Shown here in pieces: positions 1 to 42,065 of a DNA stretch of 64,000 bases. Positions within the stretch are counted from its first letter, which is position 1; each line of letters begins with the position of its first letter. Below the pieces are notes generated by a model. It had not been told where the DNA came from and made no database searches. It was given only the letters and a program-made list of their open reading frames with translations. Where the stretch lies: IMG/VR virus record IMGVR_UViG_3300028735_000003, positions 124,001 through 188,000 of that record; one strand, written 5' to 3'. The position numbers were made by a program, and so were the translations under genes.

Positions 1-455
1 TCCAATGGAACAGCAATAACATTGCTTGGTAACTCAAGATATTCGTGTAATACACCAACATATCTTGCTGATAATTTAGAACTAAATAATTGTGGTCGGC
101 TATATACTATCGGTCCATGATTAAAAGTAATTGTATATGCTTGCTTATTTAGATTTTTGAATACATCAATATTATTAATTACAAGATAATCATCAGCGTC
201 TATTATAAATATATAATCCGCTTTATTTTTAGCTAGTTCTAAAGATTTATTTCTATTGGTAGCAAAATCAAACCACTTATGCTTATGGAATTCACCAGGA
301 ATATCTTTAAGGCAATTCTGAACAATATATTCTGTATTATCAGTAGAGCCAGTATCACATATAATCCAGTAATCAATAAATGGTTTTACAGAGTTAAGAC
401 ATCTTTCTATGCAATGCGCCTCATTTTTTACAATCATAGATAAACATATGGTCAT
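1..455 (-). CDS. GT2-family glycosyltransferase resembling the protein/peptide-modifying (SunS/flagellin-GT-like) type; runs off the left edge of the window
   Basis: Not in the ORF track; translated by hand from ATG at 455: MTICLSMIVKNEAHCIERCLNSVKPFIDYWIICDTGSTDNT...WFDFATNRNKSLE...YIFIIDADDYL...YVGVLHE. Contains the MIVKNE, DTGSTD, DF..RN, DxD (DADD) and G.xHE motifs; AGGA upstream. Confidence 0.85.
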   Translation of the reverse strand, partial: MTICLSMIVKNEAHCIERCLNSVKPFIDYWIICDTGSTDNTEYIVQNCLKDIPGEFHKHKWFDFATNRNKSLELAKNKADYIFIIDADDYLVINNIDVFKNLNKQAYTITFNHGPIVYSRPQLFSSKLSARYVGVLHEYLELPSNVIAVPL

Positions 456-476
456 GTCCTATGATATATCGATACG

Positions 477-1463
477 TTACTCATATTTTACAAGTATATA
501 TGCATCATAGCATATTAATTCGTTTAAGGAAAATATGGATACATTATAGTGAGCTGCTATAGCATTTCTTATGCTACCATTATTGTTTCCTACTGATAAT
601 TTTTCGCTGATATAACGAATTGGTTTTGTATCTTTTACGATAATATTTCCAGTAACAATTACTTCATTATTAGTTTCATCATATAATTGTATGGTTATCT
701 TTTCGCCAATATTATTAGATTTAATATCAATTACAAAAAATAATGTACGTGTTAGTCCAGATATTATAGTAGGATAATCTGCCATATCAATACTAGTGCC
801 GCCAACAACTCCATGGGTAACAGGCGTCATAGAGCTAACTATTGGTACTCGAACTGGTAAAATAGCGCCTGGTAATCCCTGAATACCAGGTGGTCCCTGA
901 AGACCTTGGTCTCCTTTTGGTCCTTGTATTCCTTGTGGACCTGCCGGTCCAACTGGACCCGTAGGACCAGGAATACCTTGTAGACCTTGAATTCCCTGAA
1001 CTCCCTGAACTCCTTGATCACCTTTTGGTCCTTGAGGTCCTCTAATTCCTTGAATACCGGCGGGACCCGTATCGCCTTTAGGACCTTGTGGACCTGTATC
1101 ACCTTTAGGACCAGTTGGTCCAATAGGTCCCATTGGTCCCGTTGGACCAATATCACCAGTATCACCTTTCGCGCCTATTTTACCTTCTGGTCCCTGTAAT
1201 CCTTGCGGACCTGTTGGTCCTGTATCACCAGTGTCTCCCCTTTCTCCAGTCATACCCTGTGGTCCTGTTGGACCTGGACTTCCAGAAATAGTAGCCACAG
1301 AATCGCCATCATAAAACATCCAACCAGATTTAACATTGTATCGTAAAGATGCTGTTTTACCATCTGCGCATTGGAAAACAATCTCTTTATCTGAATCGGT
1401 TCCATCACCAATGTATAATGTATTTCCAGGTATTGAATTTATCGGGCTGCTTAGTTTTGGCAT
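477..1463 (-). CDS. Collagen-like (Gly-X-Y) fibre/decoration protein; paralogue of 4877..5602
   Basis: Long uninterrupted G-X-Y tract (GPTGPQG...). Start moved to MPKLSS (ATG 1463) because the longer ORF overlaps the upstream gene and this N-terminus aligns with MAKIVS of 4877..5602. Confidence 0.8.
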
Positions 1464-1477
1464 GATTATCTCTTTAC

Positions 1478-1798
1478 TTAAATTGCCCAGGTTGCTATGA
1501 CTCTTATTGTAGGTTGAACTAATGTCCCAGGACCAGAATAATGTGCTCCAGTGAAATCTGGAGAACCAGTTACTGTCCAACCAACGTTATTTGTTCCATT
1601 ATAACCCACCATATGATAATATCTGACTTGTGTTGTTCCTGATCCTGCACCAACAGAGCAATAAACTGATGCCAATTTAGCATTTGGTAATGATGACTTA
1701 ACTGGGTCTTTAAACTCATGTTTTCCATCATATCTTACATCAGGTGCTGAAGAAGATACCGCAACATATGGAAGAGCTTCACCACTTAAATCAGCCAT
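1478..1798 (-). CDS. Small putative virion protein (106 aa)
   Basis: ATG at 1798 overlaps the upstream stop (TAATG coupling). Its C-terminal half resembles the N-terminus of 5616..8402. Confidence 0.65.
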
Positions 1799-2805
1799 TA
1801 GAAACCCACCAATGGTATTGTGCCAGGAACACTTGGAGTTCCATTCCAAGGAAAAATAAAATCATCGCATTGCCAAAATTGTCTTGTTGAATCATCTGGG
1901 TATGTTGTATCCACATATGATCCTAAATTAGCTGCAGATATATCTCCAAACCACAAATCATATATTTGCCCATGACGACCCTTAGCTCCGGTAGTTTCCG
2001 ACACGAGAGATATTGGATAAATATCATATTCATTGCTTATTTGATTTATAGAGCTAAAATTCTCTAATGTGGTTGCAGAGCCAAATCCCTCAGTGGCTAG
2101 ATACAATTTTGATGTTACAGAATTCATATAAGAAGTAAGAATTGCATTGTCATTATATATATCTAATCTACATTGAGTACTTAAATTACCGATACTACTA
2201 CCGGTTCTAAAAGCGACAATAAATGGATTTGTCCATCCACTTACTGGATTTTTTGGTTTGTCAAATAACCAAAATAAACCTGGGATACGTTGAGTTAGAT
2301 ATACTATCCTAGTACATTCTCCATCAGTACTCTGCATAATTTGCAACATAATATTGTCAGCAACGTTAGGATACCAATAGTCATTATTATTATCCAATAC
2401 AATCTGTGTCGTAGCAGTAGGTCTATTTAATGTTGAGCCGCCGGTAAATCCGCTAAGTCCGATTACAAATCCAATATATCTTGTACTGTATGAATATCCA
2501 AAATCTATACAAATCTCAAAATTGGAAAATATTCCAGTTTGTTTTAGAACTATCCAAGAATGTGCAACAGAACCTGCTGTTCCCCACTGAATATCATCTA
2601 TGGTATTCCACCTATCAACACCATCCATTCCTGCAGTGGTCTTGTTTGATGAGCCAGTAACAACCCATGGATTAGATTCAAAAGTTGTTAAGGCATTTTT
2701 AAGAGCCAAAATCATTTTTTTTGTATTAGTATGTTCATCACCAGTAGATGGTATCATTATATTTGGTTTAAATTGCCACGTTTTTTCAATTGTTGGTAAT
2801 GCCAT
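1798..2805 (-). CDS. Putative virion/fibre-associated protein, paralogue 3 of a tandem triplet
   Basis: Shares MALPT..KTW.F, NPW.V.GSS, AHSWIVL.Q, DGECTR, FWLFDKPKNPVSGW.NP, GRHG..YD and PWN with the two neighbouring genes. Confidence 0.7.
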   Translation of the reverse strand: MALPTIEKTWQFKPNIMIPSTGDEHTNTKKMILALKNALTTFESNPWVVTGSSNKTTAGMDGVDRWNTIDDIQWGTAGSVAHSWIVLKQTGIFSNFEICIDFGYSYSTRYIGFVIGLSGFTGGSTLNRPTATTQIVLDNNNDYWYPNVADNIMLQIMQSTDGECTRIVYLTQRIPGLFWLFDKPKNPVSGWTNPFIVAFRTGSSIGNLSTQCRLDIYNDNAILTSYMNSVTSKLYLATEGFGSATTLENFSSINQISNEYDIYPISLVSETTGAKGRHGQIYDLWFGDISAANLGSYVDTTYPDDSTRQFWQCDDFIFPWNGTPSVPGTIPLVGF

Positions 2806-2815
2806 TATATGTTCC

Positions 2816-3850
2816 TCATACGCTTCTATAAAAATCTGTTTTGTTCCATGGTAAGACTATGTTAGAAAAACACATAAATTCTCTGGCGCCAACTGCCGGA
2901 AAAGAATCTCCAGAATATAATACGCTGGATGTAAAATACATATCATAAATTTCACCATGTCTACCGTAACACCCAGGAGTTGTAGATGCCAAACCTATAG
3001 GGGTTAATGGCCATTCACCAGTTAATTGATTAGCGTATATTTGATTCTCTCCAATTGTTGCTGAGATATAAGCTTCTGTTGTCGCATATAGATACATGGT
3101 TGATGAATTAGCTACACCAATTATGGTGGCGTTATCATTTAATTGAGAATATGTAGCAGCAGTAGAGCCATTCAGTGCGTTGTATAAAAATATACATGGA
3201 TTAGACCATCCAGATACAGGATTTTTTGGTTTATCAAAAAGCCAAAATACTTTTGGAGTTAGTGCACTAAACGCAAATACTCTAGTACATTCTCCATCTG
3301 TACTCATCATACAACTTACATTATAACTAACAGGGACGTAACCGTTAATAAACAAATAATTATTTGGGAAACAGGTAATAACATCGGTTCCTGTCGGTGT
3401 TTGTGTAGTTACTGGTGAAGACAAATCAAATCCATTCAGTGGAGATACATATCCACAATTATAATAGGGGGAGGAATTTGGTTGTTTTAAAGAAATACAC
3501 ATTTCAAATTTAGTATTTATCTTTGGTTGTCTAAGGACGATCCAAGAGTGAGCGCTTCCACTAGGAGCCCAAACCAAATCATATATTGTTTTCCAATTAT
3601 CATTTGTATTTGCTACTAATGTTCCAGTATCAGATGTGGCTCCGTTTCTGCCAGACGATCCGCTAACAGTCCAAGGATTACTATTAATAACAGAATATCC
3701 ATCTTTGTCTTTCCATCCTGTAGGGTCAGTCAACATATTTTTTACAGTTAAATGGAAATTTCGCATATCTTCTTTATTGTCGTTATTACGAGTAAAATAT
3801 ACATTATTTGTCTTAAATATCCATGTTTTATCTAATGTAGGAATAGCCAT
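2816..3850 (-). CDS. Putative virion/fibre-associated protein, paralogue 2 of a tandem triplet
   Basis: Same conserved blocks as 1798..2805 and 3860..4867; AAGG RBS. Confidence 0.7.
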   Translation of the reverse strand: MAIPTLDKTWIFKTNNVYFTRNNDNKEDMRNFHLTVKNMLTDPTGWKDKDGYSVINSNPWTVSGSSGRNGATSDTGTLVANTNDNWKTIYDLVWAPSGSAHSWIVLRQPKINTKFEMCISLKQPNSSPYYNCGYVSPLNGFDLSSPVTTQTPTGTDVITCFPNNYLFINGYVPVSYNVSCMMSTDGECTRVFAFSALTPKVFWLFDKPKNPVSGWSNPCIFLYNALNGSTAATYSQLNDNATIIGVANSSTMYLYATTEAYISATIGENQIYANQLTGEWPLTPIGLASTTPGCYGRHGEIYDMYFTSSVLYSGDSFPAVGAREFMCFSNIVLPWNKTDFYRSV

Positions 3851-3859
3851 ATTATACCT

Positions 3860-4867
3860 TTAAGTAGTAACTGGTGTTGATTGATTCCATGGTAAGATTA
3901 TATCTCCAGCCTGTACGAATTGTTTTAAAGTTCCGCTTGAAGGATATGTATCCCCATTGGCAGGAGTAGTTGAGCCGAACCAAATATCAGATAATTTACC
4001 ATGACGACCATAAAATCCAGTAGTCATAGATGCTAGCCCAATCGAAGTAAATGGCCAAGCATTCGACAACGAATTAACTGTTGTTTGTCTTTCACCAACA
4101 GTCGCTGACACATAAAAAGACGTTGTATAATAACAGTTGGCGTTGCCAGTTTTACCGAACAAATTAGTAGCTTTTATGTATCCTCTTGCCGCATCATTTA
4201 ATACATCATATGTTGGCTCTAATGTAGAACACATAGTATTTATTGCTGGATTCGTCCATCCGGTTACTGTCTCTTTTGGTCTATCAAACTGCCAAAAACA
4301 TTTGATAACATTAGCCACGTATATCCATAATCTATTACAATACCCATCATCACTTATTTCTATATTTAAAACAGAACTAAATGGTGGCGTATTATTAGTT
4401 AACCACCCAGCGGATGCCAAATGTACCACTTCATCTGTAGCAGTTGGTCTTGTTAATGTTGATGGCGATGAAACATCAAATCCTGCGCCCAAAGAAGATA
4501 TTAGGCTTAATCTGTAACCAGAGCTATCTATTATATTTAAGTCTATACAAAGTTCAATATTCATGTCATTTATTTTGCTTTGTCTCAATACAATCCATGA
4601 ATGAGCTCCGCTATTCCAAACTAAATTTGTAATATTAGACCAATTATCAGCCGAATTAGCAGTAATAGAATTACTTGACGCGACAACTATCCAAGGATTA
4701 GATAATGTAGTTATTGCTCCAGACGAATCTGTCCAACCAGTACCAGAAGTCAATGCATTTTTTATGCCTAATAGAAGAGTACGATTATCTGTTAAAGCAA
4801 CACCTGATGTAGCATATGCTTGATTTACTTTAAATCTCCATGTATGTTCCAGTGAAGGTAATGCCAT
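3860..4867 (-). CDS. Putative virion/fibre-associated protein, paralogue 1 of a tandem triplet
   Basis: Same conserved blocks; GAGGA RBS. Confidence 0.7.
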   Translation of the reverse strand: MALPSLEHTWRFKVNQAYATSGVALTDNRTLLLGIKNALTSGTGWTDSSGAITTLSNPWIVVASSNSITANSADNWSNITNLVWNSGAHSWIVLRQSKINDMNIELCIDLNIIDSSGYRLSLISSLGAGFDVSSPSTLTRPTATDEVVHLASAGWLTNNTPPFSSVLNIEISDDGYCNRLWIYVANVIKCFWQFDRPKETVTGWTNPAINTMCSTLEPTYDVLNDAARGYIKATNLFGKTGNANCYYTTSFYVSATVGERQTTVNSLSNAWPFTSIGLASMTTGFYGRHGKLSDIWFGSTTPANGDTYPSSGTLKQFVQAGDIILPWNQSTPVTT

Positions 4868-4876
4868 AGTTCCTCA

Positions 4877-5602
4877 TTAGTACGAATATTCTATTGTAGC
4901 ATGTCTACATATAGCTACATTTGGACTTACCGACCCGACCAGACTTAATTGAACCTCATAATCTTTCATAGAGTTAGGAAAACCTCTTGTTGTTCCAGGA
5001 ATTAAAATAGCAGTTACAGTAGTTGGTACATGATTATTTGTAAATAAATTAGTTCCACTTACTTCTATATCATCAGTTGTATTATATAATCTAATGTAAG
5101 CATACCCATCAGTAGCTAATATATCAGCAATAAATAACCATGAACTAGCATCTGTAACTGATGGATCTAATCTTCTAATAGATCCCAATGTAGTATAACC
5201 ATTAGACGTACTAAAAACTCCTGCCAGACATGGGTATTCCCCTCGTAATAATCCGCCAGCAGTGCCAGTAGGACCAGTAGGTCCAGTTATGCCTGTCGGT
5301 CCTTGAGGTCCAGTGGGACCAGGATCGCCTTGAATACCCTGTATTCCTTGAATGCCCTGTACACCTTGTGGACCAGTTGGTCCAGTTGGTCCAGTTGGTC
5401 CAGTTGGTCCAGTTTGTCCAGCAGCAAAACTATGATATGCATATCCATCTGAATATTGCCAGCCGCCACCAATGTCAAACTTTAATGCAGCAATGTACCC
5501 ATCTGGTCTAATTGCTTCTATACGTTTTTCGGTGCCAGTGTCGTCTCCAATACGGATAACATTTTCATCTAATACATTGATGCCACTGACTATTTTAGCC
5601 AT
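4877..5602 (-). CDS. Collagen-like fibre/decoration protein (GPT-rich), 3 DGY motifs
   Basis: Central GPTGPT/GIQ collagen tract flanked by globular domains paralogous to 477..1463. Confidence 0.8.
5373..5408. repeat. 9-bp tandem repeat (ccagttggt x4) encoding the Gly-Pro-Thr collagen repeat
   Basis: Read directly from the sequence. Confidence 0.85.
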
Positions 5603-5615
5603 AGTGTTTACTCAC

Positions 5616-8402
5616 TTATATCTCTAGAGTTACAAATAAATTCTCAACTGCACAGGTGGCACTTGTCTCACATCTTATTGTAATCCAATCTCCTTCCACA
5701 ACGCTGAATGAATCTACTAAATTCTTAGCAACGTATCCAACTATACCAGCAGGCATAGAACTATCAAGTGTCAGTGTTAATGCTGTATCTATCTTATTTT
5801 TTCTTACAGTTATAATAACAGTTTCACCAGAAGATGGGGGTGTTGAACAAGTTACAATTAATCTACTTACCGTTGCAGTAGGTGCATTGACAACATATGC
5901 AGGGAAGTTCTCACTTCCAGCACCAGTTTCAATAGCCATACTTACAATGTACCCGTCTAGAGGCGGAGAACTTGTCAATGCTCCATATGCGCCAACAGTA
6001 ATTGCTGTAGAGCCCGCGCTTATAGAGTGAGTATGTAAAGCATCTGCATTGCTTCCATTACATAATTTACTTATATTTAGACCTGTCACTTGCTCTGCTA
6101 CATGATATCCATCAATTGCGAAATTTTCTGTTATTGTAGATGACCCACCAGGTAAATCTATATAAGCACCAGTTTTAGAATTAGCTTTCAAATATGCTTG
6201 TGGTCCCATTAGATTTATGAACAAATTCATATTGGACCCATCAAGATATATGTGGTCTGTTTGTGCATTGGAATTGAATATTACATCTGAATTACCTAAT
6301 ATCGTACCAGCATCAATATGAACTTCATATCCATCTAAATTAAGAGATGTTGCTGAAGTAACGTTTACTTCATAGCCATCTAGATTAGTAACAAAATCTG
6401 TGCTACCAATTAATAACTCGTCTGATGTATTAGTTGACCATACTGGAATATCTATATTATTTAAACTATTTCTGGCTGCCGATCCCAATGTATTGTTAGG
6501 AACTCTAAGTGCTCCAGATTGAGCGGCAATATATGTACCTGTTGCCGATGGCGTGACTACTACTGTAGATGCCATCATTGGCAAGTTAGAAAGCAAGGTT
6601 AAATCATCACCATTTTGCACACTAGCAAACTTCCAATATCCATCAGATTCGCTCCAAATTATTGCAGAGTGGTCTCTATCGGTGATTCCGTCAGCGCTGC
6701 CTCTCTGAATTGATATACCAGTAATCAATGTTGGTATTGGGGCAATACCAGTGGTATAATTTAAGTGAATTACTCTGTCTGCGATATCTACAACTGTGCT
6801 ATCAATAGATGTTGTGGTACCTACAACCTCAAGATTTCCCATAATAATCGTATTATTTGTGGCGGAGCCAATGACTACACGATTATATCCATCAGATCCA
6901 ATCAAATATATGTCATCAGAATTAGTGGTGTTTCTAGCCATAATAGCTGCAACACCATTTGGAACACGTATCATACCATCTTGGGATGGATTTGTACCAA
7001 TGTTAAAATAAGGTCCATACCCATCTATTCCAATATTAGCTCTATTAATACCTCCTAATTCAAATTGAATAAATCCAGGCTGTGTTCCACTGTTGCCGTT
7101 ACCAGAGCTTAGAACCAACCCTCCACCTTGAAATGCTCCAGAAGTATCCTGTGCTCTTACTGTTAAATTTTGTGTAACACCATTAGTAGAATCTTGTAAT
7201 ATAATTGGAGATGTTAATGCATCGTCAAATCTAAATGATTTTGCATTTAACCAAATACTATCATTATCAGTTGGATAAATTGCATTATTTGAGAATATAG
7301 TTAATTTGGTTTGGTTTGCAGTCTTAAAAGATATATCTCCATTACGACTACCAGAACCAGATTGAAGAATTAATTTTCCACCATAACCAGAAACGTCTGT
7401 TGTATTTTGTGCCTGAATCGTTAATATCTGCCCATTACCAACTGTTGTTGTAGTTTGATAAATAATCGGAGTATTTGCATCTATTGAAAATCTGGCAAAC
7501 GAATCTCCCAATTCTACAAATGACACGCCATTAACAAGAAAACTATGATAATATGTTGCAGCAACACTATTAAGTATGCCTTTATTTATAGAGTCACCAA
7601 TATATATAGTATCGCCAATGCTTTTAATCAAATTAAGATTATTACCAAGTGTGTCTATAGAATAGATTGAATCGCCATTTTGCAATCTAATAGTTCCAGT
7701 AGTTGGGACATTGCTAAGTCCATGCGTTATATGGTCGCCAACCAGTAGTTCTTGTGTAACATAAACAGGATTTGTTATTGAACCAAGTTTTACCCTATTC
7801 GATCCATCTATCTGTACAATATCTACGTCTGCAGTATTAGATGCATTTCTTCCTCTAATAACAGAATCATTTGGATTATAATTAGGAATACGTATTATCC
7901 CTGATTGTGCAGGATCTGTGCCAACTGCCAAATATCCATCGATAGATAACGATCCTGTAAATACAGGAATAGATGCGCCAACAGTAGTTCCATCGCCAGA
8001 TGTATTGTAAGCAAACTTCCATCCAGATAATGTTTCATCCCAGAATAGACAAGCGTGATCTCTAGGAATTAAACTAGAAGTATATCCTCTAACAGCCGCC
8101 AAACCAGTGATTTGTGGTGGTGGTGGAACTGTATCTAAATAAGGGGCAGTTGGAGGATGAATCCAATCATAACTGTTTATATGAAAGAAGTATCCATCTG
8201 TTGAGTTAGTAGGTTTTAAGAAATTCTCTACTGCTGATTGAACTATTCTATTTACAGTTATATTTACAAAATTAGCAGAATTATAAATAGGTGGGGCATA
8301 CTTTGCTATTGAATCGGGTTGATCATTAACAATCCAATCAACATATCCAACGGCTCCTGGTGCCGCTGTATTGTAGGCTCTCATATAATATTGTATTGGC
8401 AT
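5616..8402 (-). CDS. Long tail-fibre-like virion protein with internal repeats, 9 DGY motifs
   Basis: 928 aa, rich in G/S/T/N/I and beta-type. Internal repeats such as ITG...RG...RDH...W...WKF and SG.IR.PN...RN..N..D. Lies in the fibre cluster. Confidence 0.7.
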   Translation of the reverse strand: MPIQYYMRAYNTAAPGAVGYVDWIVNDQPDSIAKYAPPIYNSANFVNITVNRIVQSAVENFLKPTNSTDGYFFHINSYDWIHPPTAPYLDTVPPPPQITGLAAVRGYTSSLIPRDHACLFWDETLSGWKFAYNTSGDGTTVGASIPVFTGSLSIDGYLAVGTDPAQSGIIRIPNYNPNDSVIRGRNASNTADVDIVQIDGSNRVKLGSITNPVYVTQELLVGDHITHGLSNVPTTGTIRLQNGDSIYSIDTLGNNLNLIKSIGDTIYIGDSINKGILNSVAATYYHSFLVNGVSFVELGDSFARFSIDANTPIIYQTTTTVGNGQILTIQAQNTTDVSGYGGKLILQSGSGSRNGDISFKTANQTKLTIFSNNAIYPTDNDSIWLNAKSFRFDDALTSPIILQDSTNGVTQNLTVRAQDTSGAFQGGGLVLSSGNGNSGTQPGFIQFELGGINRANIGIDGYGPYFNIGTNPSQDGMIRVPNGVAAIMARNTTNSDDIYLIGSDGYNRVVIGSATNNTIIMGNLEVVGTTTSIDSTVVDIADRVIHLNYTTGIAPIPTLITGISIQRGSADGITDRDHSAIIWSESDGYWKFASVQNGDDLTLLSNLPMMASTVVVTPSATGTYIAAQSGALRVPNNTLGSAARNSLNNIDIPVWSTNTSDELLIGSTDFVTNLDGYEVNVTSATSLNLDGYEVHIDAGTILGNSDVIFNSNAQTDHIYLDGSNMNLFINLMGPQAYLKANSKTGAYIDLPGGSSTITENFAIDGYHVAEQVTGLNISKLCNGSNADALHTHSISAGSTAITVGAYGALTSSPPLDGYIVSMAIETGAGSENFPAYVVNAPTATVSRLIVTCSTPPSSGETVIITVRKNKIDTALTLTLDSSMPAGIVGYVAKNLVDSFSVVEGDWITIRCETSATCAVENLFVTLEI

Positions 8403-8414
8403 CGTTTCCCCTAA

Positions 8415-10268
8415 TTATGCTCTTGATAATTCTCTCCACTCAACAGTAGCAAATGCTCTTCTGTCATCAGCGCCTATTGTAGCTGTATCAACTCGTACTA
8501 TTAGTTCATTAGTAGATGTTGTTATTGTTGTGGTCCAGCCAGTGCCATTATCTGTAGCTAGTGTAGACTTTATTTCATCCAAAACTAAAGTTCCAGATTC
8601 TTGATGAGCTAATATATCATAAATAAATCTTGCGCACGTAGGCGTTCCGCTTGTATTTACAACAAGGATTCTAACACACATTTCATAGGCTTTACCATTT
8701 TCAGTTGTTATATTTGCTGACGTACCTGGGATGGTTAAATCAAATTGACCACCGTTGATTTGATATCCATCTAATAAAATTCTAGAAAATTGCGCATCTC
8801 CAACTGATGCCCAGTAATTTAATGCATAAGTTTGTTGCCCAGAAATTCTCGATTTGGCAGCATAACCACATGCTGAAGCATATGTTGCGGATACTGTATT
8901 TCCATATCCATCAGCTATTCCGAACTCTCCATTAATAGTATTTGAATTTCCAAATACATGGGAATTATCAGCAGTGACTATATTATTCGACCCTATAACG
9001 GAAGAATTCTTAGAAGTTACGTTATTACTAGAACCTAACAAGATAACACTATCAGCCCCGCTTACTGTATTTTGTGTACCAGTTATAACAACTGAATATT
9101 CACCACTTACTATGTTTCCAGCACCAGTGATAATTGTAGAAGAACCAGATGTGGCTTGATTTAATACACCATTAATAACTGTAGAAAGACTACCCGAAGC
9201 AGTATTATTTGATCCGTTTAATATAGCAGACAAATAGCCATCGGCGGAATTGTGTATTCCATTATTAATAGATCCTAAATGTCCTGTAACAGAGTTAGAT
9301 AAACCTCCAATAATGGATGCATAATAGCCATCAGCTATATTATTCGACCCGCCAAATATAGACGAATACGGCTTAGTTATAGAATTATAGCTTCCCCCCA
9401 ATATGGAGGCAAATTCTTCAGAAATCGAGTTTTCTAATCCCCCGCCAATTATAGAATAATCAGCCGTAATTGTGTTTCTATATCCGCCAACTGATGTAGA
9501 ATAGTTTCCTGATACACCAATACTCAAATTACTACTTGCTAAATTGACAATACCAATCTTTGTATTATCAATTACCGACTGACTAACGGGTCTATTAGCA
9601 ACTATATTTTGTGATTCATAAAGAGGGTTGAAGACGATAGGTAATCTTGTTGGAACCCAAGATGATGACTGCCATATTAATGCGTAACCATCAGATGGTG
9701 TAATGGCAGATACGGGGCGTCCTTGAATACCTATTACTGTTTGATCTGTTTTTGTTCCTGAAAGATCTCTATATGCACTAAAACCAACTTGTGGCTCCCA
9801 ATATCCGTCAATGTTATTCCATGTAAGATGATATCCGTCAAGCGGCATTGTTGATACCAATGGTCTGTCTTGCAACCCTATTACAGTCTGGCTGTAATAT
9901 CCTCCAGACAAATCTCCACCAGCCGACCAAAAATCAGTTGGAATCAATTGCCAAAGATTATTTCTGCGTTGGTACAGTCCCTCATAGACATAACCGTCTC
10001 TTCTAAGGTACAGAGAACCGTTAAGCCTATTTTCTGTTGGATATCCATCACCAACACTAATAGAAACACCGCCATATCCATCTATATAAAATGGATTAGT
10101 AACATTTGGTGCAGGTGCATGTGGGTTGTTTATTCTCGCTTCTAGAATATCTAATCTAACACGAAGATCTGCATAAACTCCAAATGGAGCTATGCCCAAC
10201 ACTCTTTCTATTGTTTGCACCGCATTAATTAGATTATTAATAGCGATTGTTTTATCGTCAATAACCAT
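8415..10268 (-). CDS. Tail fibre/adhesin with beta-helix (YadA-head-like) repeats, 10 DGY motifs
   Basis: Two DLSG....QTVIG.Q.RP.....P.DGY...W repeats, followed by many ~14-aa S.I.GG..N repeats. Confidence 0.7.
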   Translation of the reverse strand: MVIDDKTIAINNLINAVQTIERVLGIAPFGVYADLRVRLDILEARINNPHAPAPNVTNPFYIDGYGGVSISVGDGYPTENRLNGSLYLRRDGYVYEGLYQRRNNLWQLIPTDFWSAGGDLSGGYYSQTVIGLQDRPLVSTMPLDGYHLTWNNIDGYWEPQVGFSAYRDLSGTKTDQTVIGIQGRPVSAITPSDGYALIWQSSSWVPTRLPIVFNPLYESQNIVANRPVSQSVIDNTKIGIVNLASSNLSIGVSGNYSTSVGGYRNTITADYSIIGGGLENSISEEFASILGGSYNSITKPYSSIFGGSNNIADGYYASIIGGLSNSVTGHLGSINNGIHNSADGYLSAILNGSNNTASGSLSTVINGVLNQATSGSSTIITGAGNIVSGEYSVVITGTQNTVSGADSVILLGSSNNVTSKNSSVIGSNNIVTADNSHVFGNSNTINGEFGIADGYGNTVSATYASACGYAAKSRISGQQTYALNYWASVGDAQFSRILLDGYQINGGQFDLTIPGTSANITTENGKAYEMCVRILVVNTSGTPTCARFIYDILAHQESGTLVLDEIKSTLATDNGTGWTTTITTSTNELIVRVDTATIGADDRRAFATVEWRELSRA

Positions 10269-10363: not shown

Positions 10364-10936
10364 TTATGAGGGGAAAATTATTAAATTCATTGATATTGGG
10401 ATTACATTAGCAACCCAATGTGTTTCTATAGAACTGCTACCACTTACCTGCACAGACAATACATTGGAAGAATATACTACTTGATAATAATATGAATTAT
10501 GCAAATATGGCGGCACGATATTAACCGATTCAATATTATATAGTAAACCTGAGATAGTTCTTAATACAATACGATCATACCAACATGATGTATGACCAAA
10601 AATATCAGTTGACATTATATGTACTAGAAGCGAACCATAAACATTATCCCCCCAAGGTATAGATATTATATTTGTATAGCCGTCATCATACGTGATGACA
10701 GAACCAAAATAACCATCAGATGGTCCAGTTGGTCCAGTAGCTCCAGTTGGTCCAGTAGCTCCAGTTGGTCCAGTAGCTCCAGTTGGTCCAGTAGCTCCAG
10801 TTGGTCCAGTAGCTCCAGTTGGTCCAGTAGCTCCAGTTGGTCCAGTAGCTCCAGTTGCACCACTAGGCACACTAGAATCAATAACGTATTTTAGTCCATC
10901 CCATTTTAGATATCCTGGATTTGGCAATGATGTCAT
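10364..10936 (-). CDS. Short collagen-like protein with (GATGPT)7, 2 DGY motifs
   Basis: G-X-T tract. Start moved to MTSLP (ATG 10936), which is preceded by a GAGGA RBS. Confidence 0.75.
10729..10854. repeat. Perfect 18-bp tandem repeat x7 (ttggtccagtagctccag) encoding the GATGPT collagen repeat
   Basis: Seven identical units counted directly. Confidence 0.95.
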
Positions 10937-11133: not shown

Positions 11134-11955
11134 TTATCTGAAAATTGAATTTTCATAAAAAGCGCTCCTATCTGTTATCACCTCAACATGATCTTCATGG
11201 ATATAAACTGAATGTTCAGCATGAGCACAAATTCCATCTGCTTGAACCGTCCAACCATCATATAAAATTCTAGTGCCAGTAGTTCCTTGAACAAGCATAG
11301 GCTCAATTGCTATAACCAGTCCAGGTTGAATTCTTATTCCAATTTCTGGTTCAGATTTATTATCAACAAATGGAGCGGCATGGAGAGTATTCCAAGATAA
11401 ACCATGACCACCATATTTCGTTATCACAGAAAAACCATTACCTTTAGCTGATTTATATATGGCGTTACCAATAACTCCAAGATGTTTATTTACAGATATT
11501 GCGCTTATGCCTTTGTTTAGAGCCTCATATGTTGACTCAATTAATTTAGTATGCCAAGCATATTTTGGCTTTCCATAAATGCAGGTAATAGCAGTATCAG
11601 CAATAGCCCCCTCATATGTAACACCAATATCAAATGTAACCAAATCACCATCTTGCAAATGATAATCGGAAGGAATACCGTGTACTAATTGATTATTTAC
11701 AGAAGTACAAACGGCTGACGGAAATCCTTTGTATCCTTTGAATGTTGGAATGCATCCATTATCCACAACAATCTTTTCAGCAAGATTATCTAATTCTATT
11801 AGAGATAGGTTGGTTTTGTTTTTAACTTCCTGTTCTAAAATAACCAAAGCCTTAGCGGCTATCTTTCCAGCATATCTTTGTTTTTCTAGCCACTCATTAT
11901 TTTGTAATGGAAAAAAGCCGTTCTTATCGAACAGCTCTCGTGTTATAACTCTCAT
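11134..11955 (-). CDS. map: Methionine aminopeptidase type I
   Basis: GYKGFPSAVCTSVNNQLVHGIP, metal ligands in DIG...AD, GHG..LH, IAIEPM, DGWTV and AHAEHSV motifs. Confidence 0.95.
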   Translation of the reverse strand: MRVITRELFDKNGFFPLQNNEWLEKQRYAGKIAAKALVILEQEVKNKTNLSLIELDNLAEKIVVDNGCIPTFKGYKGFPSAVCTSVNNQLVHGIPSDYHLQDGDLVTFDIGVTYEGAIADTAITCIYGKPKYAWHTKLIESTYEALNKGISAISVNKHLGVIGNAIYKSAKGNGFSVITKYGGHGLSWNTLHAAPFVDNKSEPEIGIRIQPGLVIAIEPMLVQGTTGTRILYDGWTVQADGICAHAEHSVYIHEDHVEVITDRSAFYENSIFR

Positions 11956-31996: not shown

Positions 31997-32968
31997 TTAT
32001 TTGAACCACCACTGGTTGTTTAGATACCATGGGACACATAAATTTGATAATCCATCAGACAGCTTAATGGTGGGTTTCCAGCCAAGTTTTTTTAGTTTAT
32101 CTGAATTGATTGAGTATCTAAAATCGTGCCCATTCTTTCTAGGATCTTCAACGAATGTTATCAAATCATGACCAGTCTTCATAACATTACATATATTTTG
32201 TATTACTTCAATATTAGAAAACTCTTGATTTGCAGATATGTTGTATATTTCGTTTGGTTTACCCTCCTTTAACACAGTCATAATTCCAGTACAATTATCG
32301 AATACATGAGTCCAGTCTCGTAGCTGCGAACCCTGTCCGTAAATAGGAATAGGAATGCCCTTTAGAATGTTTTTTATAGCTTTTGGAATCAACTTTTCGG
32401 GCGACTGCCTTGGTCCATAGTTGTTAGCAGACCTAGTAATGTTATAAACTAAACCATGCGATTGGTTGGCTGCTTTTACGATTAATTCTCCAGCAGCTTT
32501 TGTAGCAGCATATGGATTACGAGGGTTGATAGGAGAATCTTCAGTCCATGAAGGCTCATCTTCAGATGTTAATTGACCATATACTTCATCTGTTGATATG
32601 TAAATAAGTTTTTGAACACCATGTTTAATGCAAGCATTTACTATAACTTGTGTTCCTAAAACATTAGACGTTACAAACGAATTAGGATCAATAAATGAAT
32701 GGTCAACAAAAGTCTCGGCAGCACCATGTATAACTATATCTGGTTTTTCAAATTGAAAAATTACATCAATAACATGTTGATCCCTGATATCTGCTATATG
32801 AAATGTATGATTTTTGTTCCAATACATAGAATTAATGACGTTTGAATTAATTCTATCTATACTAACAAAAGAATAAGGTTGTTTCTCATAGATAGCCTTA
32901 CGAATGAAGTTTCCGAATATAAACCCACAGGATCCAGTTATTAAAACTTTTGGTCTGTTATTGTTCAT
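31997..32968 (-). CDS. rfbB: dTDP-glucose 4,6-dehydratase-like NAD-dependent SDR
   Basis: VLITGSCGFI, HGAAETFVD, STDEVYG, YAATK, NNYGPRQ.PEKLIP, RDWTHV.D, HDFRYS. Confidence 0.85.
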   Translation of the reverse strand: MNNNRPKVLITGSCGFIFGNFIRKAIYEKQPYSFVSIDRINSNVINSMYWNKNHTFHIADIRDQHVIDVIFQFEKPDIVIHGAAETFVDHSFIDPNSFVTSNVLGTQVIVNACIKHGVQKLIYISTDEVYGQLTSEDEPSWTEDSPINPRNPYAATKAAGELIVKAANQSHGLVYNITRSANNYGPRQSPEKLIPKAIKNILKGIPIPIYGQGSQLRDWTHVFDNCTGIMTVLKEGKPNEIYNISANQEFSNIEVIQNICNVMKTGHDLITFVEDPRKNGHDFRYSINSDKLKKLGWKPTIKLSDGLSNLCVPWYLNNQWWFK

Positions 32969-32971
32969 TAA

Positions 32972-33802
32972 TTACCTATCATATATGTTAAATTTTTGAT
33001 TTTTTTCGTACATATATTGATCTAGACAATATCGATGTTGCCATTTTTCTCTAAGATATATCAGGTTATGGTTCAAAAATAACCTATTTGTAGGAACCTT
33101 CTTAAGCGAGCTGCTATCTTCATGATAAATATTGGTATTACCACAATATAGAATCTTCTTTTCCATATTATAGTGAATTGCTAAACACAAATCTACATCA
33201 TCAAACCCCCAATGATATTTTTCATCCATTCCATCATTGCCAGATTTTACATTGTGATGAACTTTTCTGTAATATTCTGCTTTAGTTAATAAAACAGCAC
33301 CTGTAACGACTTGAAATAAACGATTTTTCTCAGCAGCATCATCTGTAATTTCATTAAGTCTAAAATGAACAGGCGCTTTGTTATCGTGATTAAATACTAC
33401 ACCAGCATGTTGTAGTCTATTGGTATTTGTAAATAGTAATCTAGCTCCAACAACACCAATACTAGAATCTTTGTCCATTAATCTAATCATTTTTTCAATT
33501 GATGTCTTATCATTAAATATGATGTCATTGTTTAGTAATAGAACATAGTCATTATCATTCGGAGCTGCCTCGTTAAAACACATATTTGTGCCCTGAGAAA
33601 AATTCTGAAGATTATTTGGGTGCTTTATTAGTTTTATATTACCTCTCCAAGAGGCAACTATTTCTGCAGTATTATCTGTTGAAGCATTATCTTTTATAAT
33701 CCAATTATACTCGATATTAGATAAAGCAGGCAAAAGCGAATCTTTTAGTTTAGTTAACTTATCTATTCCATTCCAAGTCAAAGTCAATATATGTAGCATC
33801 AT
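32972..33802 (-). CDS. GT2-family glycosyltransferase
   Basis: DNASTD, NFS...N, LLLNND, VVGARL, QHAGV, VTGAVLL, DDVDLCL, H..S.S. Confidence 0.88.
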   Translation of the reverse strand: MMLHILTLTWNGIDKLTKLKDSLLPALSNIEYNWIIKDNASTDNTAEIVASWRGNIKLIKHPNNLQNFSQGTNMCFNEAAPNDNDYVLLLNNDIIFNDKTSIEKMIRLMDKDSSIGVVGARLLFTNTNRLQHAGVVFNHDNKAPVHFRLNEITDDAAEKNRLFQVVTGAVLLTKAEYYRKVHHNVKSGNDGMDEKYHWGFDDVDLCLAIHYNMEKKILYCGNTNIYHEDSSSLKKVPTNRLFLNHNLIYLREKWQHRYCLDQYMYEKNQKFNIYDR

Positions 33803-34015
33803 ATTTTCTTTCTATATCTGTCAGTTCTTTTTTTTATTTGCACACATCCGGCGACATCTGCCAAACTTGATTTTATTTATAGTGGTATCACAAATAGTTT
33901 TACATTCATTACGCCTTAAAGAATATGGAGTAGCTTGCCATCTATAAAATATGATATATCTTACAAAGATATTATTGCTACTCTATTCATTTTACTAAGA
34001 TATAGTATTACTAGA

Positions 34016-35035
34016 TTAAAACCCCATACTTAAATTGCTTCCAACCATAAAATTACCAGTATAATCTACTTGTATAGATGGTCCAAGATATGTATTTCTA
34101 ATTAGCCCTGAAGAAAATAATTTAGACATATTAAAGTTAATTGGATTAATTATCATCACAAACCTTTTGCTTACCACCTCATATCCAAGACCTAATTGTA
34201 AAATACTTATATTTGGATTGGGTTTATATTGTCCATAACTCATCATACCCAAAGTAATGCCCGTATTAAATGTACCTTGAATACTAGATGTATTTAAATT
34301 AATGCCCCCACCTGATGTTAAAAATAATCTTGGATTCCAAAACTGAAAACTAGCGGAAGGATATTCTTGCTTCGTCTCTGTCTTATCAATACGCAAATCA
34401 TATGATCTGCCATCTACAATAATACTAAATTTATTATATACATACTCGCGCTGATTCTCATCAATACCGGTTATAGTAGCTACCTTATATTGCCTTGGTA
34501 AAATATTAACAAACCAAGGCTCTTTTTTCCAAGCAGAAAACCCTACAGTGCCAATTGGTACGGCAAAAGAACCGAATTGCTCAGATAATGTTAAATCACG
34601 TCTTGCCGTTAAATACCCATTAGGGTCAGCATTTGGACATGGAATTTGCTTTCCATTGCAATCCACTGTGGGAGTTTGAGGATTTGGATTTATTGGACCC
34701 GTCCCTGTACTAGGAACATTATCTTTCTTTACTCCTCCACTAGTTACAGTAATCACATTAATAGCCTTAATTTCAGCATGTAGTTTATCCATGTCATTTC
34801 TAATAACATTTATATCTACACCATTATTTTTGGCGAATACTTCAATATCTTTTTTAGTAGCATACTCATTTAAACTTCGTGTTATATTATCAGATAATTC
34901 TTTTTGTTTTACAACTTCTGTTTCTATGGCTTTTTGTCTCTCAGACATTTCAAACTGCTTGTAAATTATTAATGAGACAGCACAAACAGCAACAGTTACT
35001 ACTAAAATTATTAATATTTTATTTGATAATGACAT
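34016..35035 (-). CDS. Membrane-anchored protein with N-terminal TM helix, coiled coil and beta-rich C-terminus; possibly spanin-like
   Basis: ILIILVVTVAVCAVSLIIY TM segment, helical stalk, amphipathic strands ending GSNLSMGF. Start is ATG 35035 or TTG 35065. Confidence 0.55.
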   Translation of the reverse strand: MSLSNKILIILVVTVAVCAVSLIIYKQFEMSERQKAIETEVVKQKELSDNITRSLNEYATKKDIEVFAKNNGVDINVIRNDMDKLHAEIKAINVITVTSGGVKKDNVPSTGTGPINPNPQTPTVDCNGKQIPCPNADPNGYLTARRDLTLSEQFGSFAVPIGTVGFSAWKKEPWFVNILPRQYKVATITGIDENQREYVYNKFSIIVDGRSYDLRIDKTETKQEYPSASFQFWNPRLFLTSGGGINLNTSSIQGTFNTGITLGMMSYGQYKPNPNISILQLGLGYEVVSKRFVMIINPINFNMSKLFSSGLIRNTYLGPSIQVDYTGNFMVGSNLSMGF

Positions 35036-35094
35036 AATGACATAACCTTGTGTTAAGACATTCAATAGACTTCTATATCTTCACCTATACCAAA

Positions 35095-35799
35095 TCATTT
35101 CTTCCATTTATTAACAAAAATTTCCCTGGCAGATTTATACAGTTGATATGTATTCAATTGAGAGCTTGTTTGCCTTCCAAAATGTACAACCGGTATAGAT
35201 ACTACTTCAAGAGGTATGCCAATTTTTTTTGCTCTGAAAGATAAATCTGTATCTTCGAAATATGCGATTCCAAATTCCTCTGAGAAAATCTGTGGAACAC
35301 ATGCGTCTGTAATTATACATTCTGTTTTCCTAGGAATATCTAATTGCGACCATATGTGTTTTGACCCAGCAATACACCATCCAGATAAATATGACTTTCC
35401 AGACAGTTTTTTATTTGCTTCCATTACAAATTCTAAATTATCATTTAATAATCCCATTGTAGGACCACATAGTGAATTTGCACATTTATCTATTAATGGT
35501 TTTGTCCAATCTTCATGATTGGACCTAACCCTTATATCATTGTTTAAAAATAAAACATTTGGAGCGGTTGCCAAATAATATCCAATATTACAGGCTTTTG
35601 CAAATCCCATATTATATGAATATCGCTTGTATACAATTTCTGTAGATTCTTTTAAAGATGATTCTGTTTCATCTGTACTTCCATTATCTACAATAATAAT
35701 TTCATGATCATTAGTGAGTCTTGTTAGATCTTTTAAGCAAGATCGTGTAAAGTTGTATTTGTTGAATACTGGGACTACTATGCTTAGTATTTTATTCAC
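35095..35799 (-). CDS. GT2-family glycosyltransferase
   Basis: LSIVVPVFN, IIIVDNGSTD, GFAKACNIG, FLNND, YFEDTDLS. Confidence 0.9.
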   Translation of the reverse strand: MNKILSIVVPVFNKYNFTRSCLKDLTRLTNDHEIIIVDNGSTDETESSLKESTEIVYKRYSYNMGFAKACNIGYYLATAPNVLFLNNDIRVRSNHEDWTKPLIDKCANSLCGPTMGLLNDNLEFVMEANKKLSGKSYLSGWCIAGSKHIWSQLDIPRKTECIITDACVPQIFSEEFGIAYFEDTDLSFRAKKIGIPLEVVSIPVVHFGRQTSSQLNTYQLYKSAREIFVNKWKK

Positions 35800-35947
35800 T
35801 ATTTAATCTCTCTTTTAATATATATTTATGATTTATATTCCATAATCACATATTTAATTCCAATTTTCGTTTTGTAAGTTATTACTGCATTATAATCAAG
35901 TTTATAATATTGAATATGATCAGACCCTCACATTTATATGTATTTTA

Positions 35948-42020: not shown

Positions 42021-42065
42021 GTTGATCTCATATAATATGTATTAAGATTAGTTACATACGCCATT

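What the first reader, a model, noticed from the sequence alone, without database searches (positions are those of the whole stretch)
1..455. Unannotated GT2 resembling protein glycosyltransferases sits directly at the end of the fibre cluster
Seen: a minus-strand ORF missing from the track starts 21 bp after the last collagen gene, with MIVKNE/DTGSTD/DADD/GVLHE motifs. Established: this GT2 pattern is found in peptide- and flagellin-modifying transferases (SunS-like, GmaR-like), often with C-terminal TPRs, although it also occurs in LPS transferases. Inference: this is the best candidate for the initiating enzyme acting on DGY or on collagen Thr residues.
Basis: partly seen in the sequence, partly recalled or inferred. 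Interest (0 to 1): 0.7.

Follow-up and report, generated by a model that had tools for sequence, protein, structure and literature searches.

The report
Phage fibre-cluster protein glycosyltransferase (GT2-TPR)
A jumbo phage carries, inside its collagen-like tail-fibre gene cluster, a soluble sugar-adding enzyme built like the bacterial enzymes that glycosylate peptides, flagellin and spore collagen, so it most likely decorates the phage's own fibres with sugar, which has not been shown for phage collagen-like fibres.

Summary
The ORF is real. Window 3..455 (-) holds the first 151 residues of a 356-aa gene that runs off the window edge; this probably explains why it is missing from the track. 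It starts 21 bp after a collagen-like gene. The closest solved structures, by sequence and by fold, are ThuS, GmaR and SunS.

New evidence concerns the wider family. It is very large, and in bacteria and phages its members sit beside Gly-X-Thr collagen-like genes far more often than chance allows. In four of the nine bacterial genomes checked, every collagen-like match lies next to the single homolog. C. difficile SgtA has the same size and architecture, sits next to bclA3, and O-GlcNAcylates Thr in GPT repeats.

Best reading (about 0.6): a cytoplasmic, metal-dependent protein O-glycosyltransferase that initiates glycans on Thr of the phage's collagen-like fibre proteins. Comparative data do not support DGY as the target. 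The gene lies in the middle of the fibre cluster, not at its end, and it abuts a sulfotransferase-like gene. No biochemical evidence exists.

The parts
1..455 (-). 5' part (codons 1-151) of the 356-aa GT2-TPR glycosyltransferase gene. The whole gene is G000:123385-124455, i.e. window -615..455. The window part carries the nucleotide-sugar-binding motifs, the DAD(D) metal site and the GxxHE motif.
456..476 (-). 21-bp spacer between the collagen-like gene's stop and the GT's ATG. It contains AGGA just upstream of the ATG. No terminator-like hairpin was found here.
477..1463 (-). Collagen-like fibre protein, 328 aa from the ATG at 1463 (a TTG at 1580 would overlap the upstream ORF). It has 47 G-X-Y triplets, 11 of them with Thr at Y. 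It is the nearest candidate acceptor.
1478..1798 (-). 106-aa ORF of unknown function in the fibre array.
1798..4867 (-). Three tandem paralogs (335, 344 and 335 aa). They are phage-specific proteins with no named family. The nearest relative has a single 318-aa copy upstream of its GT.
4877..5602 (-). Collagen-like protein, 241 aa, with 19 triplets, 10 of them G-X-Thr (GPT runs).
5616..8402 (-). 928-aa fibre-like protein with 9 DGY. Its N-terminal 438 aa are conserved in the nearest relative and its C-terminus is variable.
8415..10268 (-). 617-aa beta-roll (LbR_Ice_bind) fibre-like protein with 10 DGY.
10364..10936 (-). Collagen-like protein, 190 aa, with 16 triplets, 15 of them G-X-Thr. It is the first gene of the minus-strand fibre array.
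11134..11955 (-). M24 metallopeptidase. This conserved backbone gene marks the far edge of the variable fibre cassette in relatives.
31997..37084 (-). Second glycosylation cluster, whose enzymes could elongate or supply sugars: an NDP-sugar 4,6-dehydratase/epimerase, a 276-aa GT2, a 339-aa ORF, a GT2 of about 235 aa and a 378-aa GT4.

Best explanation
The gene encodes a soluble, cytoplasmic GT-A-fold (CAZy GT2-type) protein O-glycosyltransferase. Its N-terminal domain (about residues 1-160) binds an NDP-sugar and a divalent metal through D34/D39 and the D86-A-D88-D89 motif, and H137-E138 probably act in catalysis. The C-terminal TPR-like solenoid (170-355) docks the protein substrate. During late infection it most likely transfers a first sugar to Thr (and Ser) at the Y position of Gly-X-Thr triplets in the phage's collagen-like fibre proteins, before or while they trimerise and join the virion. 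By analogy the sugar would be a hexose or HexNAc from a UDP-sugar. The phage's other glycosyltransferases may then extend the glycan. Shown here: the gene, its fold, its family signature, its position in the fibre cluster, and the statistical linkage of the family to Gly-X-Thr collagen-like genes. Inferred: the acceptor, the donor sugar, the timing, the catalytic roles of individual residues, and the biological effect (fibre stability, protease or antibody shielding, or receptor interaction).
For: Fold and signature: the AF2 model has pLDDT 95.3, with a GT-A sheet followed by ten helices. SunS and ThuS are the top six PDB fold matches, and ThuS, GmaR and SunS are the top PDB sequence matches. 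The motifs are shared with SunS and GmaR. There is no hydrophobic segment (maximum 19-residue hydropathy 1.03). Context in this genome: the GT lies 21 bp downstream of, and co-directional with, a collagen-like gene. All five collagen-like ORFs of the 354-kb record lie within 11 kb of it. 58 of their 113 triplets are G-X-Thr. Close relatives and the cultured Tunturiibacter phage Tunturi_5 all have Gly-X-Thr fibre genes within 8 kb of their GT; in Tunturi_5, tail fibre gp29 has seven such runs. Family-wide linkage: 22 of 52 bacterial loci have a collagen-like ORF within two genes, with Thr at Y in 58% of triplets. 49 of 80 bacterial loci and 12 of 32 dereplicated viral loci have a run of at least 8 triplets in the flanks. 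In four bacterial genomes of 3.7-4.9 Mb, every Pfam collagen match lies beside the single GT copy, and in four more one of the three or four collagen genes does. The linkage is scattered over the GT tree rather than confined to one clade. A B. thuringiensis plasmid homolog sits next to a BclA-like gene. Precedent: C. difficile SgtA is 358 aa with a GT-A domain and a C-terminal TPR, is encoded next to bclA3, and adds beta-O-GlcNAc to Thr of GPT repeats in a Mn2+-dependent way (PMC7157674). The GmaR TPR is proposed to recognise flagellin (PMC9638930). Two long relatives are fused to the collagen-modifying GT_PLOD domain.
Against: There is no biochemical or proteomic evidence. The catalytic half also resembles LPS-core GT2 enzymes. 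Fusion partners include the LPS-associated families GT9 and GT25. After dereplication, direct adjacency to collagen genes in viral loci is only modestly enriched (5/63 against 12/477, p=0.04). Many family members have no collagen gene nearby, and one enterobacterial plasmid homolog follows an autotransporter gene, so acceptor choice varies within the family. In Tunturi_5 the GT is co-directional with a nucleotidyltransferase and replication genes. The phage has five other GT2 ORFs and a GT4 that could act on the fibres instead.
Confidence: 0.6

Rival explanations
1. The enzyme modifies a host envelope glycoconjugate (LPS core or O-antigen, teichoic acid, capsule) during infection, for example to block superinfection. 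It sits in the fibre cluster only because that region is a hypervariable host-interaction island.
For: The GT-A half matches the LPS-core enzymes WaaE, KdtX and LpsC at 1e-9 to 1e-12. The PHROG label is 'beta-1,4-glycosyltransferase', moron/AMG category. Relatives are fused to GT9 and GT25 domains. GTs in phage host-recognition clusters have been read this way (PMC7029224).
Against: The LPS-core relatives lack the TPR domain. The whole-length fold matches are protein and peptide GTs. There is no membrane segment. This reading does not explain why bacterial homologs sit beside the only collagen-like genes of their genomes.
Confidence: 0.15
2. It is a protein glycosyltransferase for virion proteins, but the acceptor is not the collagen repeats. 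It could be the DGY tripeptide (Tyr) or other Ser/Thr-rich parts of the large fibre proteins, or the three paralogous proteins of about 340 aa.
For: DGY is the most over-represented tripeptide of the proteome (88 observed against 16.5 expected) and is concentrated in fibre proteins next to the GT. Family members occur beside non-collagen surface proteins such as an autotransporter and Laminin_G_3 fibres.
Against: DGY enrichment is seen only in this phage lineage (L009 34 against 2.1, L015 11 against 1.2) and not in the 29 other dereplicated GT-bearing viral loci. No enzyme of the SunS, GmaR or SgtA type is known to me to glycosylate Tyr (my own knowledge). Collagen linkage is the family-wide signal.
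Confidence: 0.12
3. It glycosylates phage DNA as an anti-restriction hypermodification.
For: Phage GTs are known to hypermodify DNA (cited in PMC12619734). In Tunturi_5 the homolog follows a nucleotidyltransferase and lies near dCMP deaminase and thymidylate synthase genes.
Against: There is no fold or sequence match to DNA glycosyltransferases among the top hits. A TPR domain and the linkage to bacterial chromosomal collagen genes do not fit a DNA role. In this phage both flanks are fibre genes.
Confidence: 0.04
4. It is a glycocin-type (SunS-like) S/O-glycosyltransferase that matures a small secreted antimicrobial peptide.
For: The best NCBIfam model and the best structures are SunS and ThuS.
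Against: It scores 48 bits against the SunS-family cut-off of 350. It lacks SunS's 50-residue N-terminal extension. The neighbourhood has no precursor peptide, SunT-type transporter or thiol-disulfide oxidoreductase, unlike the phage SPR sun locus.
Confidence: 0.02

Closest known systems
SgtA of Clostridioides difficile (BclA3 O-GlcNAc transferase)
   Same: Nearly the same length (358 against 356 aa). Both have an N-terminal GT-A/GT2-type domain and a C-terminal TPR. Both genes sit directly beside a collagen-like gene rich in Gly-Pro-Thr. SgtA is a metal-dependent, soluble enzyme that adds the initiating sugar to Thr (PMC7157674).
   Different: SgtA is a bacterial spore-surface system, whereas this gene is phage-encoded and sits among tail-fibre genes. 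Sequence homology to SgtA could not be tested here. The donor sugar is unknown.
SunS / ThuS glycocin S/O-glycosyltransferases (PDB 7msn, 7msp, 7msk)
   Same: Best whole-length fold matches (E 3.5e-15 to 1.2e-13). They share the IVxNE, DxxSxDxT, WxDFxxxRN, DAD and GxxHE motifs and the GT-A plus helical C-domain layout. SunS is itself prophage-borne.
   Different: Only 18-22% identity, and far below the family cut-off (48 against 350 bits). It has no N-terminal extension, and no peptide precursor, exporter or Bdb genes nearby. The acceptor is probably a large structural protein rather than a small Cys peptide.
GmaR of Listeria monocytogenes (flagellin O-GlcNAc transferase and antirepressor)
   Same: GT domain signature (E 1e-9) followed by TPR repeats. 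It modifies a filament-forming structural protein in the cytoplasm.
   Different: GmaR is 637 aa, with linker and MogR-antirepressor domains that are absent here. There is no flagellar context.
Mycobacteriophage virion glycosylation (Freeman et al. 2023, as summarised in PMC12619734)
   Same: Phage-encoded glycosyltransferases that decorate the phage's own virion proteins.
   Different: The targets there are C-terminal tails of capsid and tail-tube subunits, not collagen-like fibres. The relation between the enzymes was not tested.
Giant-virus fibril and collagen glycosylation (Mimivirus-type; PMC9614988)
   Same: Virus-encoded glycosylation machinery acting on surface fibrils, with collagen-like proteins encoded by the virus. 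Family members occur on giant-virus MAG contigs, and two relatives are fused to a PLOD-type collagen GT domain.
   Different: The known Mimivirus collagen enzyme acts on hydroxylysine through a PLOD-like protein (my own knowledge). Here the predicted target is Thr, and the enzyme is GT2-TPR.
LPS-core GT2 enzymes WaaE / KdtX / LpsC
   Same: Similar GT-A catalytic domain (Foldseek 1e-9 to 1e-12 over residues 2-240).
   Different: These are about 255-270 aa with no TPR domain, and they act on lipid-linked oligosaccharide.

Membership tests
Glycosyltransferase family 2 (Pfam PF00535, GT-A fold) | HMM score above the curated gathering threshold | tested here: met
   41.2 bits against 23.3 for the full protein, and 43.8 bits for the window fragment.
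Glycosyltransferase family 2 (Pfam PF00535, GT-A fold) | Rossmann-like GT-A sheet with an Asp-x-Asp metal/NDP site | tested here: met
   The AF2 model (pLDDT 95.3) has alternating strands and helices over residues 3-157. D86-A-D88 is invariant in 40 homologs and in SunS and GmaR.
SunS-family peptide S-glycosyltransferase (TIGR04195) | Equivalog HMM score at or above the cut-off (350 bits) | tested here: not met
   48.3 bits.
SunS-family peptide S-glycosyltransferase (TIGR04195) | Operon with a glycocin precursor, a SunT-type exporter/peptidase and thiol-disulfide oxidoreductases | tested here: not met
   The neighbours are collagen-like and fibre genes and a sulfotransferase-like gene. Compare the phage SPR sun locus.
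SunS-family peptide S-glycosyltransferase (TIGR04195) | GT-A domain followed by a helical (TPR-like) C-terminal domain | tested here: met
   Foldseek aligns about 378 columns to 7msn and 7msk at 3.5e-15 to 2.3e-14.
GmaR-type flagellin O-GlcNAc transferase | GT domain plus TPR plus linker plus MogR-antirepressor domain (637 aa) | tested here: not met
   The protein ends after the TPR-like domain at residue 356.
SgtA-like collagen-repeat O-glycosyltransferase | About 358-aa protein with an N-terminal GT-A domain and a C-terminal TPR | tested here: met
   356 aa, GT-A at 1-160 and helices at 170-355. SgtA is described in PMC7157674.
SgtA-like collagen-repeat O-glycosyltransferase | Gene adjacent to a Gly-X-Thr collagen-like gene | tested here: met
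   A 21-bp gap to the 328-aa collagen-like gene. The pattern recurs across bacterial and viral homologs.
SgtA-like collagen-repeat O-glycosyltransferase | Sequence homology to SgtA (CD3350) itself | not testable with these tools
   No tool gave the SgtA sequence. The nearest proxy is a B. thuringiensis plasmid homolog (27.5% identity over 93% of the query) next to a BclA-like gene.
SgtA-like collagen-repeat O-glycosyltransferase | Transfers a sugar from a UDP-sugar to Thr of GPT-type peptides | not testable with these tools
   This needs an enzyme assay.
PHROG 13126 ('beta-1,4-glycosyltransferase') | Full-length HMM match | tested here: met
   E 1.1e-29 over residues 1-337 of 356. The label is an annotation, not a tested activity.
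Phage DNA glycosyltransferases | Fold or sequence similarity to known DNA GTs, and a hydroxymethyl-pyrimidine pathway | tested here: inconclusive
   No such match appears among the top PDB or Swiss-Prot hits. The pathway genes were not examined.

The most novel reading that the evidence does not exclude
The glycosyltransferase and the sulfotransferase-like gene that abuts it tail-to-tail (0 bp apart) work together, with the phage's other glycosyltransferases, to coat the collagen-like fibres with sulfated O-glycans. That would make a proteoglycan-like or mucin-like phage fibre. More broadly, this GT2-TPR family would mark a widespread and largely unrecognised system, in bacteria, phages and giant viruses, for O-glycosylating Gly-X-Thr collagen-like surface fibres.
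Probability: 0.12. Interest if true: 0.85.

Novelty: new member of a known kind. Interest (0 to 1): 0.55.

Why it matters
If correct, collagen-like tail fibres of large environmental phages are glycoproteins made by a phage-encoded enzyme. Phage virion glycosylation is so far documented for capsid and tail-tube subunits of mycobacteriophages. Glycans on receptor-binding fibres could affect host range, fibre stability, and resistance to proteases and antibodies. The comparative result may be more useful than the single gene: a family with thousands of representative clusters, named only 'glycosyltransferase' or 'involved in cell wall biosynthesis', is tied to Gly-X-Thr collagen-like genes across many phyla. 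That assigns a testable acceptor class to many unannotated enzymes and extends the SgtA/BclA3 model well beyond spore-formers. A cultured relative, Tunturiibacter phage Tunturi_5 (gp35 with tail fibre gp29), makes the idea directly testable.

Tried and rejected
- Complex prediction of the GT with the adjacent 328-aa collagen-like protein returned 'no answer' (score 0.00). It is not evidence either way.
- Direct comparison with SgtA was not possible because no tool gave its sequence. The SunS/ThuS structure paper (PMC8688163) and the mycobacteriophage glycosylation paper (PMC10527164) are not held, so the catalytic roles of residues are inferred only.
- A single-protein scan of viral contigs found only 5 loci. 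The alignment-based scan was needed.
- The sulfotransferase-like neighbour shows no BLAST similarity to the sulfotransferase part of the fused relative P0122. It has no PDB sequence match and no homolog in the records of the three nearest relatives. I therefore dropped the idea that it co-varies with the GT or with DGY.
- The promoter and terminator scan gave nothing informative around the GT.
- Tree test: collagen adjacency is not clustered on the GT tree. I take this as broad distribution, not as evidence of co-evolution.
- The cyanobacterial pilin Ogt is GT41 and not related.
- The three paralogs of about 340 aa have no named relatives.

Full report
WHAT IS THERE. The window is bases 124001-188000 of a 353,765-bp IMG/VR virus record, which CheckV rates 79% complete. 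It is a tailed jumbo phage: it has a baseplate wedge and a gp25-like baseplate protein, ribonucleotide reductase, PhoH and helicases, and its GC content is 30-37%. The ORF at window 3..455 (-) is open at the window edge. In the full record it is a 356-aa gene, G000:123385-124455 (P0001). Its ATG at 455 lies 21 bp downstream of the stop of a co-directional collagen-like gene (477..1463).

The first strand of the predicted Rossmann-like sheet spans residues 3-9. SunS and GmaR align through this strand. The ATG at 455 is therefore the better start, rather than Met7, which the public 350-aa gene call uses (P0002).

WHAT KIND OF PROTEIN.
- Pfam gives GT2 at residues 7-91, plus weak TPR hits at 172-215.
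- An AlphaFold2 model built on 40 homologs has mean pLDDT 95.3. It shows a GT-A alpha/beta domain (about 1-160) followed by ten helices (170-355).
- The best PDB sequence matches are ThuS (1.8e-10), GmaR (1e-9) and SunS (1.5e-8).
- The best NCBIfam model is the SunS family, at 48 bits against a cut-off of 350.
- Foldseek against the PDB puts SunS and ThuS in the top six places (3.5e-15 to 1.2e-13), aligned over both domains. The next matches, near 1e-6, are TPR proteins, TarP and TarS.
- Against Swiss-Prot models the top matches are an uncharacterised cyanobacterial TPR protein and SunS. TPR-less LPS-core enzymes (WaaE, KdtX, LpsC) follow and match only the catalytic half.
- An alignment with SunS from phage SPR and with a GmaR ORF shows that I8 V9 E12, D34 S37 D39 T41, W61 F64 R68, D86 A87 D88 and G134 H137 E138 are invariant.
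- The protein has no hydrophobic segment.

So is the caveat about LPS transferases.

WHERE IT SITS. My ORF map of the record shows that the GT is the last gene of a minus-strand array, window 455-10936. The array holds:
- three collagen-like proteins (190, 241 and 328 aa);
- two large DGY-rich fibre-like proteins (928 and 617 aa);
- three paralogs of about 340 aa;
- a 106-aa ORF.

The GT's stop codon abuts, with 0 bp between them, the stop of a plus-strand gene outside the window (G000:122734-123384). The ESM Atlas places that gene with phage sulfotransferase-family clusters (feature score 0.98; structure TM 0.73-0.79 to Sulfotransfer_3 clusters). That gene ends a second fibre arm, G000:118266-123384, which contains a 414-aa collagen-like protein and a 634-aa DGY-containing protein. 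The GT is thus at the convergence point of two fibre arms, in the middle of the cluster and not at its end. All five ORFs of the record with five or more G-X-Y triplets lie within 11 kb of the GT, and so do all four runs of eight or more triplets found in six-frame translation. Thr occupies the Y position in 58 of their 113 triplets.

The record also carries five other GT2-domain ORFs, a GT4 and an NDP-sugar dehydratase/epimerase, in two further clusters. None of these has the GT2-TPR architecture.

RELATIVES. The family is very large.
- 2185 proteins match at E<=1e-5 in the word-indexed search. Many are 50-79% identical and lie on contigs of 140-476 kb.
- In the exhaustive search, 18,857 representative clusters match at E<=1e-3 and 3,239 at E<=1e-30.
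- More than 588 stretches in IMG/VR and more than 564 in GTDB species genomes encode relatives. The bacterial hosts include Streptomyces, Holophagaceae, Burkholderiales, Xanthomonadales-like genera, Chlamydiae and cyanobacteria.
- The nearest relatives (49-77% identity; L009/L005, L014, L015, L007) keep the GT at the junction of variable fibre cassettes. The neighbouring proteins have conserved N-termini and swapped C-termini (Laminin_G_3, Peptidase_S74, collagen), between the same backbone genes: an M24 peptidase, a flavoprotein-like 404-aa gene and RNase T.
- Each of these loci, and the cultured Tunturiibacter phage Tunturi_5, has Gly-X-Thr runs in fibre genes within 8 kb of the GT. In Tunturi_5, GT gp35 is 38.6% identical and tail fibre gp29 has seven such runs.

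LINKAGE TO COLLAGEN-LIKE GENES.
- Viral loci: a collagen-like ORF is the immediate neighbour in 28 of 149 adjacent positions. After dereplication at 70% identity this falls to 5 of 63, against 12 of 477 for genes four or more positions away (p=0.04). 12 of 32 dereplicated loci have a run of at least 8 triplets in the flanks.
- Bacterial loci: 22 of 52 have a collagen-like ORF within two genes. Its Y position is Thr in 58% of triplets (GAT, GPT, GST, GNT, GET). By six-frame scan, 49 of 80 loci have a run of at least 8 triplets within 6 kb, and 47 of these are Thr/Ser-rich.
- Whole-genome controls: in four genomes of 3.7-4.9 Mb (those of L121, L175, L108, L135), all Pfam collagen matches lie beside the single GT copy. 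In four others, one of three or four collagen genes does. In one genome none does. I chose most of these genomes because a collagen ORF had already been seen near the GT, so the control shows how rare collagen genes are in these genomes and is not an unbiased rate. With one to four collagen genes per genome, the chance of finding one within about 5 kb of a given gene is below 1%, against the 42-61% observed.
- The linkage is scattered over the GT tree, needing at least 16-22 changes, and is no more clustered than in shuffles. It is therefore a family-wide property and not one inherited block.
- More distant homologs repeat the pattern. A B. thuringiensis plasmid GT (27.5% identity, 93% coverage) is the divergent neighbour of a BclA-like 'collagen-like repeat preface' gene with GPT/GAT repeats.
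- There are exceptions. An enterobacterial plasmid homolog follows an autotransporter gene, and many loci have no collagen gene.
- Long relatives are fused to further GTs (GT25, Anp1/GT62, GT9, GT1/4 and, in two cases, the collagen-modifying PLOD GT domain), to methyltransferases and to a sulfotransferase. This suggests the module belongs to multi-step glycan assembly.

PRECEDENT. C. difficile SgtA is 358 aa, with an N-terminal GT-A domain and a C-terminal TPR. It is encoded immediately upstream of bclA3. It adds the initiating beta-O-GlcNAc to Thr (and also Ser) in GPT collagen-repeat peptides, using UDP-GlcNAc and preferring Mn2+ (PMC7157674). GmaR has a GT domain followed by a TPR that its authors propose recognises flagellin (PMC9638930). 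Phage-encoded virion glycosylation is known for mycobacteriophage capsid and tail-tube proteins (as cited in PMC12619734).

MECHANISM PROPOSED. This is a cytoplasmic, metal-dependent GT-A enzyme. Its TPR-like domain docks unassembled fibre subunits, and it adds a first sugar to Thr at the Y position of Gly-X-Thr triplets. Other phage GTs may elongate the glycan. The gene, the fold, the signature, the position and the linkage are shown. The acceptor, the donor, the timing and the effect are inferred. I put this at about 0.6. The rivals are:
- host envelope modification, about 0.15;
- a non-collagen virion acceptor, including DGY, about 0.12;
- DNA modification, about 0.04;
- a glycocin system, about 0.02.

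DGY. The tripeptide is real and striking. It is the most over-represented tripeptide of the proteome (88 observed against 16.5 expected) and is concentrated in fibre proteins, with no conserved flanks. It is enriched only in this phage lineage (L009 34 against 2.1; L015 11 against 1.2) and not in 29 other dereplicated GT-bearing viral loci. It does not co-vary with the sulfotransferase-like gene. It therefore remains unexplained, and it is a weaker candidate acceptor than Gly-X-Thr.

VERDICT. The classification is supported. The acceptor inference is supported by association for collagen Thr and is not supported for DGY. The pairing is the phage counterpart of a known one (SgtA with BclA3), so I file it as a new member of a known kind. 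Its interest is moderate to good because glycosylated collagen-like phage fibres have not been demonstrated, and because the family-wide linkage gives a testable acceptor class to a very large unannotated enzyme family.

Noticed in passing
window 5616-10268 and 37977-49229; also L009 and L015: DGY is the most over-represented tripeptide of the proteome (88 observed against 16.5 expected). There are 9-10 copies each in the 928- and 617-aa fibre proteins, with no conserved flanking residues. The same enrichment is seen in the nearest relatives' fibre loci but not in other GT-bearing phage loci. Its role is unexplained.
   Followed up: partly
outside the window: G000:122734-123384 (+), i.e. window -1266..-616: A 216-aa phage sulfotransferase-family protein (Atlas feature score 0.98; structure TM 0.73-0.79 to Sulfotransfer_3 clusters). 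Its stop codon abuts the GT's stop with 0 bp between them. No homolog was found in the records of the three nearest relatives. One long GT relative carries a fused sulfotransferase domain.
   Followed up: partly
window 26614-27875 and 37133-37717: Inverted repeats, 94-98% complementary over about 570 nt, made of two TnpB/OrfB_IS605-like (Cas12f-like TNB) gene copies. They flank a 9.3-kb segment that carries a GH25 lysozyme, a 933-aa protein with a PhuZ-tubulin-like region, and the second glycosylation cluster. This could be a mobile or invertible cassette, or an assembly feature.
   Followed up: partly
window 31997-37084; G000:308929-311760: Two further glycosylation clusters. The first has an NDP-sugar 4,6-dehydratase/epimerase, two GT2 ORFs and a GT4, next to the giant 1347- to 2387-aa structural proteins. 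The second has three GT2 ORFs of about 235 aa. With the finding's gene, the record has six GT2-domain ORFs in all.
   Followed up: partly
window 1798-4867: Three tandem paralogs (335, 344 and 335 aa) with no Pfam or PHROG family and only phage 'hypothetical' look-alikes. The nearest relative has one copy, just upstream of its GT. Tunturi_5 has four paralogs of about 285 aa in the equivalent place, but homology between the two sets was not shown.
   Followed up: partly
L182 (Citrobacter plasmid NZ_CP056187.1, locus 1921-6197): A 37%-identical GT2-TPR homolog lies directly downstream of a 990-aa autotransporter gene on conjugative enterobacterial plasmids. It may be an autotransporter-glycosylating member of the family.
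   Followed up: no
alignment A3 (55 long relatives of the GT): The GT2-TPR module is often fused to other enzymes: GT25 (8), Anp1/GT62 (6), GT9 (4), GT1/4 (4), PLOD-type collagen GT (2), several methyltransferase families and a sulfotransferase. Tandem copies of the module also occur.
   Followed up: partly
window 477-1580: The collagen-like gene next to the GT is listed from a TTG at 1580 (367 aa), but that start overlaps the upstream 106-aa ORF. The ATG at 1463 (328 aa) fits the gene spacing better.
   Followed up: partly
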